Shown here piece by piece: positions 30,693-42,052 of a stretch of DNA of 64,000 nucleotides. This DNA is from Mytilus californianus (Eukaryota). The stretch lies in assembly GCF_021869535.1 (NCBI RefSeq), contig NW_026262581.1:51770001-51834000 (forward strand), given 5' to 3'. Position 1 is the stretch's first letter. Each line of letters starts with the position of its first letter. The notes beneath the pieces are model-generated. The model saw only the letters and a program-made list of their open reading frames with translations. It had not been told where the DNA came from and made no database searches. Made by a program: the position numbers and the translations under genes.

Positions 30693-31904
30693 TCAGATTT
30701 CAATTCAGTTTTTCTTCATGTGATCTCTGTAACGTGTTTGCTGAGTAAACCCTTTTCCACATCTTTCGCACGTGTATGGCTTGTCACCGATGTGTACTCT
30801 CTGGTGGATGGTAAGCTCATACTTAGTTAAAAACTTTTTATCACACACACCACAGCTATACGGTTTAATGCCCGTATGTGTTCACTTCAATCCACCAGAA
30901 TCTGCATATCTCTTACCACACGTATCGCACCCATAGGGCCTTTCACCAGTGTGTGATCTCATGTGTCTTTGTAACTGAGCTTTGTCTCCGAAAGGGCCTA
31001 TCACCATTGTGTGTCTTTTTAATGTGTCTTTGTAAATTACTTAAGACGGAAAACTTTTTGTCACATATATCACATTTGTATGGAGTTTCACCCGTATGTG
31101 TTCTCGTATGTATTGTTAAAGACCCATTTTCAGCAAAGCTTTTACCACATTTGGTACATTTATACGGTTTTTCACCTGTGTGTATTCTCATGTGACTTAC
31201 AAAATTATTTTTTAATCTAAAACTTTTACCACAAGTTTCACAATCAAAAGCCTTATAATCTGGATGTCTGCCCACATGTTTAGTCAGGCGATTTTTATGA
31301 GTAAAACCTTTACCACATGTATCACAAGTATAGGGTTTCTCACCAGTATGTATTCTCATATGAGAAGTCAATTCTCCCGGAGAATTATATGTTTTATCGC
31401 ACACATCGCAATTATGATTTTTATTGCCCGTATGAATTTTCAAGTGTGTGTTCAGGTTACTGCTTTGTCTAAACGCCTTACCACACACCATGTATTTGAA
31501 GGGCTTCTCGTCAGTATGGGTCCTCATATGAATTGTGAGACAATTATTCTTCCTGAATCTTTTACCACATATATCACATTCATGTGCACGTGGTTTATCA
31601 TATAAACCAGTATGTGTTTCCATGTGTTCCTTCAAATTGATGGATATTTCACAACGATATTTTTTCTCAACACTATGAATTCTGTTGTGTTTTGTAAGAT
31701 TTCCTTTATCTATTAAGTTTTTACCACATGTAGGACATCCGTGTGTTTTTTCCTCAGTATGTGTTTTCACGTGAATTGTTAAATTGTTTTTCATCTTAAA
31801 ACATTTACCACATATTGAACAGCAATATTGGTTCTTGTCACTATGAATCTTCATATGTTTAATTAGGTCACCTGCACATCCACTACAACTATGTGGTCTA
31901 GTAT
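30693..31904 (-). pseudogene. ZF copy C, 3' part (fingers about 8-22)
   Basis: Paralogous to copy A. Deletion and frameshift after NGDRP, partial finger deletions, and a premature TGA replacing the terminal Cys ([12 protein letters not shown]). Confidence 0.9.
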
Positions 31905-32421
31905 GGAAAGCGGCAACCGGGGTCAAAATTCTTAATTCGTAAATTGTCAATTTGTAACTTGTAACTGTGAAATTTTCAAAATTCTTAATTCGTAAATGGT
32001 CAACTTGTTACTTGTAACTGTGAAATTTCAAAATTCTTAATTCGTTATATGTCAATTTGTAACTTGTATCTTTGTAATTTAAAATTCTTAATTAATTTCG
32101 TAAATTGTCAATTTGTAACTTGTAACTGTGCAATTTCAAAATTCTTTATTCGTAAATTGTCAATTTGTATATTGATGTTTTGTAACTTGAAACATGTCGA
32201 TTCGTTAAATGTCATCGTTGTATTATGTTAACGATCATTATGACGACGGATGGCGCTCGGTTTCTTTTTCTGTATATAAGCCTCCTGTAAGTAGGAGCAT
32301 CTCCGTATGGAGTATATACCCTTAGTAATTTAAATCAATTATGTACAGCACATACATATAAAAGAAAACAAACAGAAATTTTTTATTTTTATATGGCATG
32401 TATACAGGAACCAGGTTTTAT
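31905..32421 (+). repeat. Left TIR with about 52-bp internal tandem units
   Basis: About 5 copies of aaattcttaattcgtaaattgtcaatttgtaacttgtaactgtgaaatttc, then unique sequence matching the right arm. Confidence 0.85.
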
Positions 32422-33853
32422 TTTGTTTTCTGAAGACGACAGGGGGCGTTTCGTTCGAGAACGGAAACTATTTAAAAATACAGCCCGATTAATTCAGTAC
32501 GTCCCTCCACGTATTAATAATCGATCTCTCCTACTTGCGAAGGTAATGAAGAAGTCATAGATATAACGACTGAATTATTCGGATAAAAAGATATAAGGAG
32601 ATGTGGTAATAAACCGTATGATTGCCAATGAGACAACTATCCACCAAAGTCAAAGTTTAAATTAAGTCGATTTAAATAGGCAACGAACGCGGCCTTAAAC
32701 AATGAGAAAACCCACACCATTTAGTCGGCTATAAGAGGCTACATCATTACTGGAAAACCCAGCCATTTTATTCTGACTGAGGGGGAAGGGCTGACAGATA
32801 TATATATTAATGTACATGCCTACTGAACTTTTTTTGGTCAAAACGGGCTTAGGAATCCCCCCAACCCCAACCCCCGACCCACCCCTTCTTAGCCTGGCAA
32901 CTCATTCTAATACTTCGTCGATCGGATCGTAAATTAACAGTTGATTCACGATGTTAATCAAAAACGTTTGTATTATATAAGATAACTTTTTCGAAATTTG
33001 CATTTCATATGAAATAAAAAATAATTTGCAATGAATTCGTAACAATATAAATATTTCCCGCCATTTGAGAAGAAAAAATGACGCTATCCCACGATGCATC
33101 ATTCTAATATCCAATGGACGAAACCATGTTGTTGTATTCCACCTGGCAATACTGTCGAGCAGTGAGCCAGGATCACAGGCTACCACTCCTCACAGTTTGC
33201 CACCATTTTGCTCTCCAAAATGATCGGCCTGACAGACCCCCCCCCCCCCCCCAAAAAAAAAAACCCCAACCCCAAATCATGTGCAAAGATTTTCATGGAG
33301 AAATAAAATGATTGCGAACAGCTTGGTTTCTGTGGGGTCTTCTCACAGTAGAAGTACTTTTGGAGACAGATTAAAATAAGCAATGTTGCTTGTTTCTGGA
33401 TCCCATTGTTTATACAGTATTATATTATATAGCATGATTTGACTTATCGAATAAAATATTGTTTAAACGAAGTACTTTTCAAAAAATAATTCTCGCCGGC
33501 AGGAATTCTTTTAACACCATTGTTGGCGCCTCTCCTGTCCGAAAAAGTTTTACATAGAATTAGAAGACATAACATCTAACTGATTGCTGATATTTTGCTC
33601 TCTAAAATGAGCTGTCATAATATTATATGAAGATTTTCATGTAGAAATAAAATTAGGGTAAGCAGATTGGCCGCAAGAATTGCTTCTGTCATGCAAATGG
33701 CGAGATGGCGAAATATTCTCTCTGACCAGTTAAAGGGGTAGGGTACGTGTCACTTTGGTTAAAAGTGGGTATAGGTGTGTAATAAAAAAGAAATAGTTTC
33801 ATAGTTTTACGATTATGGTCATTGGCAAAATATCCAGAGGGGACACCACCAGG

Positions 33854-34109
33854 AAATCACACCATTATACTCCTGGTATATGTCATGTCTCGTCGATCCA
33901 GTAATCATTCTAGATCTGTATCTGTATCTGTAGGAATACCTTGTGTATACCAATACTGGATTTAATACAAAAGTAGAGATTGCGCCGTCGATTTATTGAC
34001 TGTTCACGAGAGCAGTTTCTGTGCGCACTACAGTGTCTTCAAGGTGGTTCCACTCGATTACTGTTTTTACGAAAAATGAGTTATAGTATTGCGGTATTTT
34101 TCTGGTTGG
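33854..34109 (+). repeat. 256-bp target duplication, left copy
   Basis: Identical by eye to 39648-39903. Confidence 0.95.
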
Positions 34110-34860
34110 TTTAAACAATCAGTACAAATTTGAAATAGAGAGGCTTAATAAAGAAAACCAATCGCTGCGTGATGGCATGGATGCGTTAGAACAATACAGT
34201 CGACGGGACTTAATTCGTATCAACGGCATTCCTGACGGTGGTATAGATGAATCTTCCATTCAAACAAACGAGTTAGTCAAAGATCTTATCAAAACCATCG
34301 ATGAACAACTAACACCCGAAGACATCATTCGATCTCATAGAATTGGTAAACCACGCACAAGGGAAGGCAATGAAGACGGCCGAGTTAACAACAAGTTTCA
34401 GCCTCCTAGACAAATAATTGTCAAGATTAAGGATCATAATGTTAAAAAGAGGATCCTCAGATGCAGAAAATTCTTAAAAGGGAAAATAGAATACAAGTAC
34501 GTCAGAATGAATGAGGACCTGACCAAGCCGAGAAACGCCATTGCATACAAAGCCAGACAGCTCAGCATTGAGCATCATCTAAGAGACACGTGGACAGTTG
34601 ATGGGAAAATTTATGTAAAGGACAATCAAATGCAAGTCCATGTTGTCAACACAATGCCAGCGTTCCTACGTTTTGTATCGATATACTGCTGTCCTGGTTC
34701 CATGGACTTCCTTGATAGGCTAGAATACAACAACAAACAAAACAGACGCGAGTACACACCACCACAACTCATAACATATGCGGAAGCACGAGCGAAGGAA
34801 TTAGCAGAGAGAGCATCTTCAAATGCATCAGCTGAAAACACGAGTGTCCAAATTTCATGA
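34110..34860 (+). CDS. LINE ORF1 (coiled coil plus RRM/CTD type), N-terminally truncated
   Basis: The frame is open from the junction (LNNQYKFEIERLNKENQSLRDGMDALEQYSRRDLIRINGIPD...RSHRIGK...IIVK...NEDLTK...WTVDGKIYVK), a typical invertebrate CR1/L1-type ORF1. Confidence 0.8.
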
Positions 34861-35742
34861 TTTAACTTTGAATAAAACTGCATATATTGACAACATTTTT
34901 TTTTTGTGTACGTATTTCTACATGTATTCAGACTATTTGACAGTCCTGTTTCAGAATTTTTTGCTTTTTTTTGTATTGTTTATTTATTTGTTTATTTTTC
35001 TATAATTACATGCTACACAATTCTTGTACATAATACATCTAATTTGTAATTCATCCAAATTCCTGTTAATTACACGGGAATACTTACCTTGATCGCTGAT
35101 TTGTCACGTGACAAATTTTAACGTATTGAAGTTCACAACACAAACTCTCATAGTAAAATAAATTACTCATGCGTGAAAAAGGTAAAACTATAACGGTTGT
35201 TTTTACATGATGTTAAAATCCATGGTAAGGAAATTTTCATGGCTAACTTCAAGCTCCTAAAACAACTTTAAAAAAGAAGATATTACTTTCAATTTGTAAA
35301 TTTTATCGTATACAAGCAATCTTTAAACAAAACGTACAGCGATTTGTACTGTTTAAAACGTGCATGCTTACTATAAATGGTAAATTGTATGGACAGATCT
35401 TGTCAATTCAGCGATCAAATAATCAATCAGGCAATATTAAATCGAGTTGATTTGACACGGCTGGTATTAACAGTTGTACTGAATTACTACGTAGATAAAG
35501 TTGTATCATTTATACATGTGTATACTCATTCCTCCAAACTACTTGTTCAATCCATGTACATGTGCATACTTTTTCTTTTGCTTCATGCATATAACATATT
35601 GTTATTCAATTTTTGTTCTCACAATTTTTTCTTATTTTTTACTTACACTTTTTTCACAAAACAAACGAAATGCTATGGATTATTTAACTTTGTATACGGC
35701 CGCTCTCAGTTTGACCAATTTCAGCCAGATGTAACATAACTC

Positions 35743-38700
35743 ATGGGGGTAGGAATCGAGTTATATCGTATGAGAGTTGGCCAATACTCACCAGGCAAAA
35801 ACATCAAACAAAGACTAAATTATATTGATTTTATCTGTATCAACTTATTTCTCGCTTGTAAAAGTGTCTCGCAGGCACTGGTGTTATCAATTTTAATCTT
35901 CACGTTGTCGCATCAACTAGGCGTGTGCCCTAAACCTTCAGAGATGAAACATGTAGACTCAAATGTACAAAAAACAACAAGTGTAAATGTGAATCTTAGA
36001 CTATTTATTATTTCATTTTTACTATTTGTTATACAAATTTTGCTAATCCTAGCAGGAATAGAGGTAAATCCAGGTCCAAGTGACGATATCGATTCTTCTC
36101 AAAGTTCAATTAACTCAACTGACATGTCGGATTTCAGTGAACTTTTCTCAAAATCAGTCTCAATTCTTCACTTAAATGTACAAAGCCTAGCCCCGAAAAT
36201 AGATCTGATTCAAGCTGAATATTCTGATTTCGACATTTTAGCGTTTAGTGAAACCTGGTTAAACAATAATCATACAGACGAATCAATTGAAATCCTAAAT
36301 TACCAGCACCCCTTCCGTCGTGACAGAGGTCAACACAAGGTTGGAGGGGGGATAATTGTTTATGTAAAAAATAATATACATGTTCAACGTCGAAGTGACC
36401 TCGAAAGCGAAAGTTTGGAAGCAATATGGTTAGAACTTAAAAGATAAAAAGGCTTTGCTCGGAACCTTTTATATACCTCCTAATAGTGGATCAGATATCT
36501 GGGAAAAAATTGAATATTGAGTTATTCTCTTGATATGGCGTCTAATGATAATACTATTAATTACATAATGGCCACTGGTGATTTTAACGATAACCAACTA
36601 GCCCCTGTTAATTCAAAAATTACACCTTTGTTAAGCCAATTTAGTCTTACTCAAATGATAGACGAACCTACTCATTTTACTGAATCGTCGTCATCATTGT
36701 TAGACCTTTTTATAACAAACGATGCTCACATAATAACATACTGTGGAGTCGGACCACCTTTATTAGACCAAATACGTTTTCACTGTCCTATTATTAGTCT
36801 TTTGAACTTTCCAAAATGTCGTCAAAAAACTTTTAAGCGAAAAATTTGGCTATATGATCGAGGAGATTATGACAGATATCGTAACATTTTATCTGAAAAA
36901 AATTGGGATTCCGTAATAAACTTAAATAACGTTGAACAATTTACAACCGAAATAACAAAAACTATCATAGAAGCTGCTGAAAAATGTATTCCAAATAAAA
37001 TAATAATTGTTCGTAAAAATGAACCTCCATGGCTAACAAATGATGTTAAAAAAATGATAAGGAAAAAAAATAGAATCCACAGAAAGGCTAAAAAATATAA
37101 TAACCAATCGGATTGGTCAAAATTTAAGAAAATACGAAATGAAGTTACCAGTTTAATAAGAAAATCAAAGGATGATTATAACAACAATTTAATTAAAAAA
37201 ATCATGAACAGTAACCCGTCCACTACTAATTGGTGGAAAACGGTCAAACAAATATCCGGATTAAAAACAAACGACGCAAGTATACCTCCATTAATGGTTA
37301 ATAACAACTTAATATTTGATGAAATCGAAAAGGCAAATGAATTTAATCGATTTTTTTCTTCCCAGTCAAATATTGATGATTCAAGTGCTATGTTACCTGA
37401 AGAACTTCATACTATTAGTGATGACATTAGTTATATAGAACTTACGGTTACTGAAGTTGAAGATATATTGAAAATTGTTAATCCCACAAAAGCTTCTGGC
37501 CCAGACCTCATAAGTCCCAAATTGTTAAAAGAAGCATCTTCTGTTTTGAAGTATCCACTATGTAAGCTATTTAACTTATCGTTAAGTACGTCTACTTTTC
37601 CAGATCAATGGAAAAGAGCAAATGTTACCCCAGTTTATAAAAATAGTAAACCGAATGACGTTAAAAACTATAGACCTATTTCCTTGTTGAGTGTAATTTC
37701 AAAGTGTATGGAACGTTGTGTATATAAACATGTTTACAATCACTTTAAGCGTAATAATATTTTAACGAAAAATCAGTCAGGCTTTACACGGGGGGATTCA
37801 GCGGTTAATCAATTAATTAACATTTCAAATGATTTTGGGAAGGCTTTAGATAGCGGTAAAGAAATAAGGGTAGTATTCTGTGATATAAGTAAAGCGTTTG
37901 ATCGAGTCTGGCATAAGGGACTGCTATTTAAACTTCAACAAGCGGGCATATCGGGTTCTTTACTAAGGTGGTTTGAAAATTATCTTACAAATAGAGTCCA
38001 GCGGGTGGTTATTAACGGTTCAAGTTCCGAATGGTTACCTGTAAATGCAGGCGTCCCACAAGGGTCCATTCTGGGCCCTCTCCTTTTTTTGATATTTATA
38101 AACGATATAATAGAAGACATTCAAGCTCAAATTAAGCTATTCGCAGATGACACTTCATTGTATATTATGGTTGACAATCCAACAGAAACAGCTACAATTT
38201 TAAATAACGATCTAGATAAGATTTATAATTGGTAAAAAAAATGGCTTGTGAATTTTAATGCCCAAAAAACTGAAAGTATGATAATTTCAAAAAAAATAAA
38301 TAGACCCTTTCATCCTCCATTAAATATGAATACCCAAGAGCTACAAACAGTAAGTAAACACAAACATCTAGGTGTCTTTTTTTCTAACAACGGATCCTGG
38401 AACGACCATATTGAATACATAGTTTCTAAATCTTATAAAAGAATAAATATAATGAGAAAAATGAAAAATGTTCTTGATAGGTTTACACTTGAAAAAATTT
38501 ACATATCATTTGTTCGCCCAATTCTTGAATATGCCGATGTCGTTTGGGACTCTCAAAATCAGAATTTGATTGCTAAACTTGAAAATATTCAGCTTGACGC
38601 AGCGCGTATCGTCACGGGGGGTACTAAACTTACCAGTATAAACAATTTATATGTTGAAACTCGATGGGAAAAATTATCTGAAAGACGACGCAATCATAGA

Positions 38701-39300
38701 TTAATTCATTATCACAAAATTTTGAATAATAAAACCCCAGAGTATTTAAGAGACTTATTGCCCGATTCAGTAGGAAGTAGGCATGATCATAATACAAGAC
38801 AAAGAAATAATATTACACAAGTCAATACTCGGACCCGTTTATATTCTGAATATTTCATCCCAGCAACAACAAAACTATGGAACACTCTTAACTTAAACAT
38901 AAGAAAATGTGAATCTCTATCATTATTCAAAAAACAAATTAGTACCCAAAATTGTAAGGTCCCAGCGTATTATTATATAGGACATCGTTTTGGTCAAATT
39001 CTTCATGCTCGCTTAAGAATGGATTCAAGTTCATTGAATTCTCACTTATTCGTTCGTAATTTGGTAGACTCTCCAAATTGTCGTTGTGGTGATGTAGAAA
39101 CAAATTCTCACTTCCTGTTATCTTGTCCCATATACACTGATTTAAGACATGAACTATTAGATTCTGTTTCAGTTCTTCCTGTCCAAGTTAACACAAAAAC
39201 TTTGCTTTTTGGATCAACGGTACTCTCGGATGAGCAAAATAGTCTTTTATTTAGTTTGGTGCAGAAATATATTATTAAAAGTAAACGTTTTAACCCTTGA
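35743..39300 (+). pseudogene. LINE ORF2 (AP endonuclease, reverse transcriptase, CCHC knuckle), disrupted
   Basis: APE motifs HLNVQSL, FSETWL, GDFN; RT motifs YRPISLL, DISKAFD, QGSILGP, LFADD; C-terminal CRCGDVETNSHFLLSC. Two compensating frameshifts at about 36443 and 36513, and an in-frame TAA at 38233-38235. Confidence 0.92.
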
Positions 39301-39647
39301 TGTTAATGCTTCATCATTCAATAGAAACCCAAGCATTTCACACCGTATAGATTACAATAATTCATGTTTATTTATTTTTTTTTATTTTTTTTTTTTTTTT
39401 TTTTTTTTTCTCATTAATTTTTTTTTTTTTTTCTTCATCTTCTTCTTCTTTCACCTTTTTTCATATTGATATATTTATTACAGAGCATGCCAGTATTTAT
39501 ATTTATGTATTGTCCAATAAGTGTATTATTTTTTGTAAAAGGAGACAGATTTGTAAAAGCAAATTGCTTGTTTCTGAATCCTTAATATTATTTCATTTGT
39601 ATAATATCGTTTAATGTTGATTTATCTGAATAAATATTGTTTAAACC

Positions 39648-39903
39648 AAATCACACCATTATACTCCTGGTATATGTCATGTCTCGTCGATCCAGTAATC
39701 ATTCTAGATCTGTATCTGTATCTGTAGGAATACCTTGTGTATACCAATACTGGATTTAATACAAAAGTAGAGATTGCGCCGTCGATTTATTGACTGTTCA
39801 CGAGAGCAGTTTCTGTGCGCACTACAGTGTCTTCAAGGTGGTTCCACTCGATTACTGTTTTTACGAAAAATGAGTTATAGTATTGCGGTATTTTTCTGGT
39901 TGG
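39648..39903 (+). repeat. 256-bp target duplication, right copy
   Basis: Identical by eye to 33854-34109; continues seamlessly into the older LINE. Confidence 0.95.
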
Positions 39904-40410
39904 AATCTCAAAACACTTTGTGTAGTTCTTGACTTGTTTTTCCACAATATTTATTGACTGATATTTGTCAAATCCCTTGGCAGTAATTGTTCTTTTTGGA
40001 CGAGCGTTCTTTTAAATATTTGTCTGATTCTATAGCTGGAACCAGCCCTTCAACCACCTCGTACAGAAATATTAGCTTCTGGCTTGAGCATCTTGTCTGT
40101 ATGTCTTGTAGTTCCAGTTTGGCGAGCGTTTTTGAGACGCAACCATCTTCTCTGGATTTGTAGTCTCCTGTTATAAATCTCGCAGTTTGTCGCTGTATTC
40201 TTTCAAGCTTGTTAATGTTCGTAGATTTGTAGGGGTCCTATACTATTGCTCCATACTCCATTATTGAACTGACCAGTGAAATATATGCGGTTTTCTTGCA
40301 TTCTGGTGTGCAATATCTCAAATTCCTTATCAGGAATCCTAGTGTTGAGTTTGCCTTCTTGGCTACGTTGGAAATATGGATAGTCCATTTTAGGTCCTCG
40401 TTAAGATTTC
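39714..40410 (-). mobile_element. Older 5'-truncated LINE (CR1/L2 group) with (CAGATA)n tail
   Basis: Minus strand NEDLKWTIHISNVAKKANSTLGFLIRNLRYC...KLERIQRQTARFITGDY...YRNSFFVKTVIEWNHL; tail cagatacagatacagat. Its 3' end is duplicated at about 33920-34109. Confidence 0.85.
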
Positions 40411-40974
40411 TAGTTCCTTTAGACTTTATAAAAAACTAGTGCATCTTCAATACAGTTTTAATATATAGTATACATTTACTTAGTGACTCATTTAAAATAA
40501 TACTTCATTTAATTTTTTTTGCTAAGTGCACACATAATATAAAACATTTTTATCTTCATTCCTCAAGAGCCAAATAAATAAAGATTTTTCATCCATTTGC
40601 TTCTTGCATTAAAAAATCATTAGATAATTAAATTCTTTTCCAAAATTTTAACATTGAGATAATAATGTTAAGAATAGTTGGGTGGCAACCTATTTCTCCC
40701 ATCATATATTTAGTCCAAAATTTGCGGCCCAGAACAATATTAGACTGAATTTTCCGGCTCAATCTTACATTTCATGTATTTAGTCTAATTTTGACCCGGT
40801 CAAATATTAAGAAGAAATTTCCTGCCAAGTGTCAGTCATATATTTGCAAAGCTGAAAAGGGAGCCCATTCCAGCGACACATCTGTATATATCTTAATAAA
40901 AGAAGTGACACATCCCCTCCCAGGTGTGGTGACCATTACAGTAGACATACATGTTTATTCTAGGTCACCTCTTC

Positions 40975-41464
40975 ATAAAACCGAGTACCTGTATATATGC
41001 TATATAAAACAAAGTATTTATCTCTTTGTTTTCTTTTATATGTATGTGCTGTACATAATTGATTTAATACTCCATATGGAGGTGCTCCTAATTACAGAAG
41101 GCTTATACACCGAAGACAAAACCGAGCGCCATCTGTCGTCATAATGATCGTTAGCACAAAACAACGATGACATTTAACGAATCGACATGTTTCAAGTTAC
41201 AAAACATCAATATACAAATTGACAATTTACCAAGAAAGAATTTTGAAATTTCACAGTTACAAGCAGAGACATATATACACATGTATGTGTATATATGTCT
41301 CTGTTACAAGTTACAAATCGAAAATTTACGTATTAAGAATTTTGAAATTACAAAGACACAAGTTACAAATTGACAATTTACGAATGAAGAATTTTGAAAT
41401 CTCACAGTTACAAGTTACAAATAGACAATTTACGAATTAAGAATTTTGACCCCGTTGGCTTTCC
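40975..41464 (-). repeat. Right TIR of the foldback element
   Basis: Reverse complement of 31905-32421 with indels. Confidence 0.85.

Positions 41465-42052
<588 letters not shown>

What the first reader, a model, noticed from the sequence alone, without database searches (positions are those of the whole stretch)
33854..39903. CR1-like LINE flanked by an apparently perfect 256-bp target-site duplication
Seen: 33854-34109 and 39648-39903 look identical. The duplicated block comprises the 3' end of an older minus-strand LINE plus its flank, and the right copy runs on seamlessly into that LINE. It is therefore duplicated target DNA, not an LTR. Established: APE-type LINE TSDs are normally short (roughly 5-20 bp), and CR1 TSDs are often very short or absent. 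Inference: this is a recent, non-canonical integration with a widely staggered second break or template switch.
Basis: partly seen in the sequence, partly recalled or inferred. Interest (0 to 1): 0.75.

Follow-up and report, generated by a model that had tools for sequence, protein, structure and literature searches.

The report
LINE insertion with 256-bp target duplication
A young, 5'-truncated LINE retrotransposon sits between two perfect 256-bp copies of the DNA it landed in; this is a rare but already documented outcome of LINE integration, with a junction that suggests both DNA strands primed on the element's RNA tail.

Summary
Bases 33854-34109 and 39648-39903 are identical over 256 nt, and they enclose a 5.5-kb APE/RT LINE.

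Other copies of this LINE family, 97-100% identical, share its 3' end at 39647 but have unrelated flanks. The block is therefore not part of the element.

Paralogues of the host repeat run colinearly through left flank, block and right flank with the block present once. That is the expected pre-insertion state.

Twelve other copies have TSDs of 5-13 bp. A 108-bp fragment 490 bp upstream has a 10-bp TSD.

- The copy is 5'-truncated by about 691 bp and defective.
- Eight extra bases at its 5' junction are the exact inverted 3' terminus of the LINE. The inverted identity is 14 nt counting microhomologies and fits twin or dual priming.
- The CR1 clade assignment is untested.

Long TSDs are known for L1 and zebrafish L2 in cultured cells (PMC5223499, PMC2666801). 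This is therefore a new member of a known kind.

Read-level confirmation failed, because only short contigs were available.

The parts
33854..34109 (.). Left copy of the duplicated target block. It is 256 nt, or 254 if the last GG was copied from the LINE RNA.
   Evidence: 100% identical to 39648-39903. It is colinear with paralogues of the host repeat, continuing leftward into 33469-33853.
34110..34117 (+). Eight extra bases at the 5' junction that are absent from every other copy. They are the reverse complement of the LINE's own 3' terminus.
   Evidence: Other copies align only from 34118 onward. 34106-34119 is the exact reverse complement of 39636-39649. The chance of this 8-mer at one given position is about 8e-5.
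34118..39647 (+). Body of a young APE/RT LINE, 5'-truncated by about 691 bp relative to full-length copies.
- ORF1 lies at 34177-34860.
- ORF2 lies at 35743-39300 and is broken by a paired frameshift (a 5-nt deletion at 36439 and an 8-nt insertion at 36515-36522) and a nonsense codon at 38233-38235.
- A 2A-like NPGP motif lies at 36055-36078.
   Evidence: Pfam gives RVT_1 at 5.7e-31 and Exo_endo_phos at 21.1 bits, below its cut-off. PDB L1 ORF2p and R2 reverse transcriptases match at about 1e-17. The copy is 99.0-99.4% identical to five other copies. Full-length copies extend about 691 bp further 5'. The private changes are listed.
39648..39903 (.). Right copy of the duplicated target block.
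   Evidence: 100% identical to 33854-34109. It continues seamlessly into 39904-41466, colinear with paralogues.
39686..40436 (-). Older, decayed LINE 3' fragment (post-RT C-terminal coding remnants and 3' UTR). It is part of the target and overlaps the right block. Its 3'-most ~220 nt are what got duplicated.
   Evidence: Minus-strand ORF remnants lie at 39790-40011, 39971-40237 and 40241-40435. tblastn against the young ORF2 C-terminal piece gives E 2e-7. Many genomic copies end at block position 39.
33362..33469 (+). A 108-bp, heavily 5'-truncated 3' end of a related LINE subfamily, flanked by a canonical 10-bp TSD (33352-33361 = 33470-33479). It serves as an internal control in the same host repeat.
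   Evidence: Read directly from the sequence. The similarity to 39617-39649 is repeat family D5. It appears as an insertion relative to paralogue L004.
31903..41466 (.). Host repeat: a unit of about 3.7 kb (without the LINE and the extra block) with inverted ends that hold 52-bp subrepeats. Both LINE insertions landed in it.
   Evidence: Inverted repeats I1-I10 are. Paralogues L004, L006, L007, L009 and L010 are colinear over both arms.

Best explanation
One retrotransposition event of a currently or recently active APE/RT LINE family inserted a 5'-truncated copy (34118-39647) into an older repeat.

The two DNA strands were opened 254-256 bp apart instead of the family's usual ~10 bp. Filling in the long stagger therefore duplicated 256 bp of target (33854-34109 = 39648-39903).

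Most likely sequence of events (inferred):
1. The element's endonuclease nicked the bottom strand at ...GATTT^CC. This left a TT 3' end that paired with the AA end of the LINE RNA, and reverse transcription began as in every other copy.
2. A second 3' end on the top strand, ...GGTT(GG), lying 254-256 bp downstream, also paired with the ...CCAA 3' end of a LINE RNA. It was extended for 8-10 nt (TTTAAACA-AT).
3. This short antisense cDNA joined the unfinished first cDNA at a 2-nt AT overlap, which fixed the 5' truncation at 34118.
4. Repair synthesis then copied the 256-bp stagger on both sides.

What is shown: the perfect duplication, the element's termini, the single-copy state of the block in paralogues, the short TSDs of the rest of the family, and the inverted 3'-terminus filler. 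What is inferred: the order of nicks, use of a second RNA, and whether the distant top-strand end came from the element's endonuclease or from a pre-existing nick.

The confidence given is for the single-event long TSD. The priming detail alone I put at about 0.35-0.4.
For: - The 256-nt repeat is perfect.
- The 3' terminus ...GTTTAAACC at 39647 is shared by at least 11 copies at 99-100% identity, each with a different downstream flank. Loose ends at 39646-39650 in three runs also diverge there.
- The 5' body starts at 34118 in all alignments, and full-length copies carry about 691 bp more.
- Paralogues L004, L006, L007 and L009 run 33469-33853 | block | 39904-40670+ with one block.
- Family TSDs are 5-13 bp in 12 copies and undetectable in 4. 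All begin with AA or TAA, as does the 256-bp block.
- A neighbouring 108-bp fragment has a 10-bp TSD.
- 34106-34119 is the exact reverse complement of 39636-39649.
- Variable sites group the window copy with the same sister copies along its whole length, so there is no sign of a mosaic.
- Zero TSD differences fit the copy's 4 private substitutions in 5.5 kb, which predict about 0.4 differences.
- Precedent: TSDs over 100 bp occur in under 10% of L1 events in HeLa cells (PMC5223499). One of 25 ZfL2-2 insertions had a 1228-bp TSD (PMC2666801). Long TSDs go with 5'-truncated L1 (PMC2912911). Twin and dual priming were described for L1 (PMC2837659).
Against: - No read or long-molecule support was obtained for junctions 34109/34110 and 39647/39648. 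Only short Logan contigs could be laid, and they break at the repeats.
- No orthologous empty allele was recovered; the pre-insertion state is inferred from paralogues that are 82-92% identical.
- The priming model rests on a single locus. None of about 17 other copies examined shows an inverted-tail filler.
- Because GTTTAAAC is a palindrome, 7 of the 8 filler bases can also be read as a direct copy of the tail, as in a template jump.
- The top-strand break site has only a weak resemblance (TT^) to the family's nick sites.
Confidence: 0.78

Rival explanations
1. Two independent same-orientation insertions of this LINE family landed 256 bp apart on homologous chromosomes, one left of the block and one right of it. 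An unequal crossover inside the LINE then produced block-LINE-block.
For: The family is abundant (442 first-look candidates for its 3' end). The same host repeat was hit at least twice, with the 108-bp fragment at 33362-33469. The product would look exactly like what is seen.
Against: It needs three rare events instead of one. Variable sites show no mosaic pattern along the copy. Long TSDs from single events occur at about the observed frequency, 1 in ~17 here against 4-10% in cell assays (PMC2666801, PMC5223499). The inverted-tail filler at the top-strand end fits a single coupled event.
Confidence: 0.07
2. Assembly artefact: the second block or one junction was created by a haplotype mis-join or a collapse between LINE copies.
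For: Perfect identity of the two blocks is what a false duplication would give. No read evidence could be obtained, and the window copy's private variants were not seen in contigs, which drop rare variants.
Against: Both junctions join a LINE end to unique target DNA at different target positions, which a mis-join of two haplotypes of one locus does not create. There are no N runs. No third 100% copy or alternative haplotig of the block exists in the assembly. The 5' junction carries a structured 8-nt filler.
Confidence: 0.08
3. The block belongs to the element, as an LTR-like terminal repeat or as 5'/3' transduced flank carried from a source locus.
For: Direct repeats that flank a retroelement are the hallmark of LTR elements and of pseudo-LTRs in tandemly inserted elements.
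Against: No other copy of the family is flanked by the block. No other genomic copy of the block adjoins the LINE. The block is an internal, colinear part of the host repeat.
Confidence: 0.01
4. The host repeat already carried a tandem duplication of the block, and the LINE inserted bluntly at the exact junction between the two copies.
For: Parts of the block (positions 39-117) form short tandem arrays at other loci.
Against: The block is single in all colinear paralogues. It would require a blunt insertion at exactly the repeat junction and perfect identity of an older duplication.
Confidence: 0.02

Closest known systems
Large target-site duplications of human L1 in cultured cells (Gilbert 2002/2005 and Symer 2002, as summarised in PMC5223499 and PMC2912911)
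   Same: An APE-type LINE integrates by TPRT. A minority of events (under 10% in HeLa) have TSDs over 100 bp. These are associated with 5'-truncated copies and explained by a distant second-strand break.
   Different: This is a natural germline copy in an invertebrate genome, from a LINE without a poly(A) tail. The cause of the distant break is unknown; the L1 work links it to NER status.
Zebrafish ZfL2-2 (L2 clade) retrotransposition in chicken DT40 cells (PMC2666801)
   Same: A non-L1, tail-specific LINE with mostly short TSDs. One of 25 wild-type insertions had a long TSD (1228 bp). 5' truncation and 5' joining were attributed to end joining.
   Different: That was a cell-culture assay of a vertebrate element. 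No inverted-tail filler was reported for that event in the passages I read.
Twin priming and the proposed 'dual priming' of L1, giving truncated L1s with a 5' poly(T) (Meyer et al. 2010, PMC2837659)
   Same: A truncated sense-oriented LINE flanked by TSDs, with the reverse complement of the element's 3' tail at its 5' end. The explanation is that the top-strand 3' end primed on the RNA tail and stopped early.
   Different: In L1 the inverted piece is a homopolymer, so its origin is ambiguous. Here the tail is a specific sequence, so the inverted piece (8 nt, or 14 with microhomologies) is recognisable. Here the event is also coupled to a 256-bp TSD. It is a single locus.

Membership tests
APE-type non-LTR retrotransposon (LINE) | Reverse transcriptase domain of the LINE type | tested here: met
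   Pfam RVT_1 at 5.7e-31, above its cut-off. The best PDB matches are L1 ORF2p and R2 proteins at about 1e-17.
APE-type non-LTR retrotransposon (LINE) | N-terminal apurinic/apyrimidinic-type endonuclease domain | tested here: inconclusive
   Exo_endo_phos scores 21.1 bits, below the 24.5 cut-off. It covers only the first 88 profile positions, because this copy's ORF2 is cut by a frameshift at 36439-36522.
APE-type non-LTR retrotransposon (LINE) | Copies share a fixed 3' end, form a 5'-truncation series, lack terminal repeats and have short variable TSDs | tested here: met
   The 3' end is shared at 39647. 5' starts are scattered from full length down to 190 bp. TSDs are 5-13 bp.
CR1 clade of LINEs | RT phylogeny places the element within CR1 | not tested
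The PDB matches do not discriminate clades.
CR1 clade of LINEs | 3' end with a short tandem (microsatellite-like) repeat and no poly(A); this trait is from my own knowledge of CR1/L2 elements | tested here: not met
   There is no poly(A). But the tail is a unique palindrome-bearing sequence...AATATTGTTTAAACC(AA), without tandem units.
CR1 clade of LINEs | ORF1 type | tested here: inconclusive
   ORF1 has no Pfam or PDB match. Atlas features lean towards the L1-type Transposase_22 and Baculo_FP families at scores of 0.90-0.91, which is a lead only.
TPRT insertion with a long target-site duplication | The repeat is target DNA: single-copy and colinear with both flanks in the uninserted state | tested here: met
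   Shown on paralogues of the host repeat, L004, L006, L007 and L009. It was not shown on the orthologous empty allele.
TPRT insertion with a long target-site duplication | The repeat boundaries abut the element's true ends | tested here: met
   The right copy starts right after the family's 3' terminus. The left copy ends 8 nt before the truncated body, and those 8 nt are element-derived filler.
TPRT insertion with a long target-site duplication | Both junctions and an empty allele are seen in reads | tested here: inconclusive
   Only Logan contigs were available. None of the listed pieces bridges either junction, and an empty allele shares all its 31-mers with the filled one.
Twin or dual priming | Inverted element sequence at the 5' side, with microhomology to the top-strand primer and at the internal joint | tested here: met
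   34106-34119 is the reverse complement of 39636-39649. It consists of 2-4 nt of primer overlap (TTGG), 8 nt of filler and a 2-nt AT joint.
Twin or dual priming | Recurrence in other copies of the family | tested here: not met
   No inverted-tail filler was seen at the 5' junctions of about 17 other copies. One copy has an unrelated 8-nt filler.

The most novel reading that the evidence does not exclude
The 256-bp duplication did not come from a sloppy second-strand cut. It came from two first-strand-type initiations on opposite strands, each at a TT^ site and each primed on the ...CCAA 3' end of a LINE RNA. The family's palindromic GTTTAAAC tail could pair two RNAs tail to tail and may favour this. 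Because this LINE has a specific tail rather than poly(A), the locus would be sequence-specific evidence for the 'dual priming' pathway that was only postulated for L1. It would also link that pathway to long TSDs.
Probability: 0.35. Interest if true: 0.5.

Novelty: new member of a known kind. Interest (0 to 1): 0.3.

Why it matters
It is a clean natural example, outside mammals and outside cell culture, of a LINE insertion that duplicated a few hundred bases of host DNA. Such events create small segmental duplications. They also leave long direct repeats that can later delete the element by recombination.

The recognisable inverted tail at the 5' junction gives a rare view of how the second strand was engaged. 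If it recurs in this family, it would make the twin/dual-priming step testable in a LINE whose tail is not a homopolymer. By itself it does not change what is known about LINE integration.

Tried and rejected
- **Read support.** The single run search found only Logan contigs of short-read runs plus one bisulfite raw-read run. Laying four runs on 33800-39799 gave short pieces that break at repeats and pile up from other copies and paralogues.
- **ORF1 identity.** There was no Pfam hit at lenient thresholds and no PDB hit. The atlas gave leads only.
- **Clade assignment.** PDB reverse transcriptases do not discriminate LINE clades. I ran no further search on naming, because the RT family is not in doubt.
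- **Block boundary.** I first suspected that the block's left edge coincided with the older LINE's terminus, because hits started at query position 3. Colinear paralogues showed this was only an alignment edge.
- **Direct reading of the filler.** Reading it as a template jump to a second RNA tail explains 7 of 8 bases. I kept it as a minor variant.
- **Fold-back self-priming** (idea of note s1-342905). Fold-back of the first cDNA would invert 5' sequence, not the 3' terminus, so I did not adopt it.
- **Genome-wide hunt for more inverted-tail junctions.** Not feasible with the pattern tool: I estimate about 500 chance hits for a 13-mer, and at most 30 loci are returned.
Full report
**Observation.** The repeat finder reports a single two-copy family, 33854-34109 and 39648-39903, 256 nt and 100% identical, with a start-to-start spacing of 5794. 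The window has no N runs. In the whole 1.65-Gb assembly only these two places match the block at 100%; the next copy is 88% identical.

**What lies between the repeats.**
- Bases 34110-39647 carry ORF1 (34177-34860) and a broken ORF2 (35743-39300).
- ORF2 has an RVT_1 domain (5.7e-31) and a weak, sub-threshold endonuclease match in the N-terminal piece.
- The nearest solved structures are L1 ORF2p and R2 proteins, at about 1e-17.
- ORF2 starts with a 2A-like ...GIEVNPGP motif at 36055-36078. Such motifs have been described in APE-type LINEs (PMC3708506, title and abstract only).
- ORF1 has no Pfam or PDB match. Atlas features lean towards L1-type ORF1 and Baculo_FP families, which is a lead only.

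**The family and the true ends of the element.**
- Searching the genome with the last 208 bases gave 442 first-look candidates. All 40 scored were at least 95% identical, and 12 of them (one being the window's own copy) were 100% identical.
- Eleven or more copies end at exactly the base that corresponds to 39647 (...GTTTAAACC). Each is followed by different DNA. Contig loose ends at 39646-39650 in three runs diverge there too.
- At the 5' side, every other copy aligns only from 34118. Six copies continue about 691 bp further upstream to a shared start.
- The window copy is therefore 5'-truncated, and 34110-34117 (TTTAAACA) is extra sequence.
- The copy is 99.0-99.4% identical to five sister copies.
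- Its private changes are four substitutions, one single-base insertion in a poly-T run, and a 5-nt deletion with an 8-nt insertion 76 nt apart. One of the substitutions is a nonsense codon at 38233-38235.

**Is the block target DNA?** Yes, on three grounds.
- No other copy of the LINE is flanked by it.
- None of the other genomic copies of the block adjoins the LINE.
- The block is an internal part of a repeated unit. Paralogues L004, L006, L007 and L009 align colinearly with 33469-33853, then the block once, then 39904-40670 and beyond, at 82-92% identity.

That unit runs from about 31900 to 41466 and has inverted ends with 52-bp subrepeats. It contains an older minus-strand LINE 3' fragment. 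The ORF remnants lie at 39790-40435, and tblastn to the young ORF2 C-terminal piece gives E 2e-7. Many free copies of that older LINE stop at block position 39.

**Normal TSDs in this family.**
- Twelve copies have clear TSDs of 5-13 bp with a median of 11. Four have none detectable.
- All TSDs begin with AA or TAA, as does the 256-bp block. This fits a bottom-strand nick after TT(A) and pairing with the RNA's terminal AA.
- A 108-bp 5'-truncated fragment of a related subfamily sits 490 bp upstream in the same host repeat (33362-33469). It has a 10-bp TSD.
- The 254-256-bp duplication is thus about 20 times the norm and occurs once in about 17 copies examined.

**The 5' junction.** A note of this scan (s1-342905) said the 5' junction is the reverse complement of the 3' junction. 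I checked this. Bases 34106-34119, TTGGTTTAAACAAT, are the exact reverse complement of 39636-39649.
- Of these 14 nt, TTGG is the end of the left block, the next 8 are the filler, and AT is the first two bases of the truncated body.
- The chance of that 8-mer at a given place is about 8e-5.
- The simplest reading is that the top-strand 3' end (...GGTT or ...GGTTGG) paired with the ...CCAA 3' end of a LINE RNA and was extended 8-10 nt. It then joined the unfinished first cDNA at an AT overlap.
- This is twin priming, or the 'dual priming' variant proposed for L1 copies with a 5' poly(T) (PMC2837659). The difference is that here the tail is a specific sequence.
- If the break is placed after GGTT, both strands were opened at TT^ sites and both primed the same way. 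The long TSD would then reflect a second initiation 254 bp away on the other strand.
- This part is inference from one locus. Because GTTTAAAC is palindromic, a direct template jump explains 7 of the 8 bases. No other copy examined shows the signature.

**Rivals.**
- Unequal crossover between two independent insertions 256 bp apart would give the same product. It needs three rare events and leaves no mosaic in the copy.
- An assembly error is hard to reconcile with two different LINE-to-unique-DNA junctions, the absence of gaps and the absence of a third copy. It is not excluded, because the only read data were short contigs that break at repeats.
- The LTR or transduction reading and the pre-existing tandem reading are contradicted.

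**Comparison with what is known.**
- L1 TSDs over 100 bp occur in under 10% of HeLa events and become common in NER-deficient cells. There a distant unrelated nick is proposed (PMC5223499).
- Extremely long TSDs go with 5'-truncated L1 (PMC2912911).
- One of 25 zebrafish L2 insertions in DT40 cells had a 1228-bp TSD (PMC2666801).
- The frequency here, about 1 in 17, is in the same range. The finding is a natural, recent, well-resolved example of a known rare outcome.
- The CR1 label was not tested. The tail lacks the tandem units I would expect of CR1/L2 elements (my own knowledge), so I file it only as an APE-type LINE.
I did not test that.

**Verdict.** This is a new member of a known kind, of modest interest. 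The most novel surviving reading is sequence-specific evidence for dual priming coupled to a long TSD.

Noticed in passing
window 33352-33479: A 108-bp 5'-truncated 3' end of a related LINE subfamily (33362-33469, ending GTTTAAACG). It has a canonical 10-bp TSD, AAGTACTTTT, on both sides and lies in the same host repeat.
   Followed up: yes
window 31903-41466: The host is a repeated unit of about 3.7 kb with inverted ends (for example 32119-32315 against 41067-41263, 92% complementary). The ends are built of 52-bp subrepeats. Several paralogues at 75-92% identity lie elsewhere in the genome. It carries an old LINE 3' fragment inside. It was also noted by another reader (s1-342942) as a foldback element.
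   Followed up: partly
window 36055-36078: A 2A-like ...LLILAGIEVNPGP motif about 100 residues into ORF2, upstream of the endonuclease domain. It has G in place of the usual D of the D(V/I)ExNPGP consensus.
   Followed up: no
window 39636-39649 and loci L030-L059: The LINE family ends in an 8-bp palindrome, GTTTAAAC, followed by C or T. Every measurable TSD starts with AA or TAA, which suggests a fixed 2-3-nt pairing between the RNA end and the nicked target.
   Followed up: partly
G000:C143:46583598-46583979, C154:112966008-112966554, C88:21520678-21521056: Block positions 39-117, the older LINE's 3' UTR, occur as several copies spaced by roughly 83-165 bp at other loci. The older LINE family therefore seems to carry a short tandem array near its 3' end in some copies.
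   Followed up: no
window 34177-34860: ORF1 has no Pfam or PDB match. By language-model features it resembles clusters carrying Transposase_22 (L1 ORF1p) and Baculo_FP domains, at scores of 0.90-0.91.
   Followed up: partly
window 36439-36522: The window copy's two private indels (minus 5 and plus 8, 76 nt apart) together restore the reading frame. Only a short stretch of ORF2 is out of frame, and it contains a stop.
   Followed up: partly
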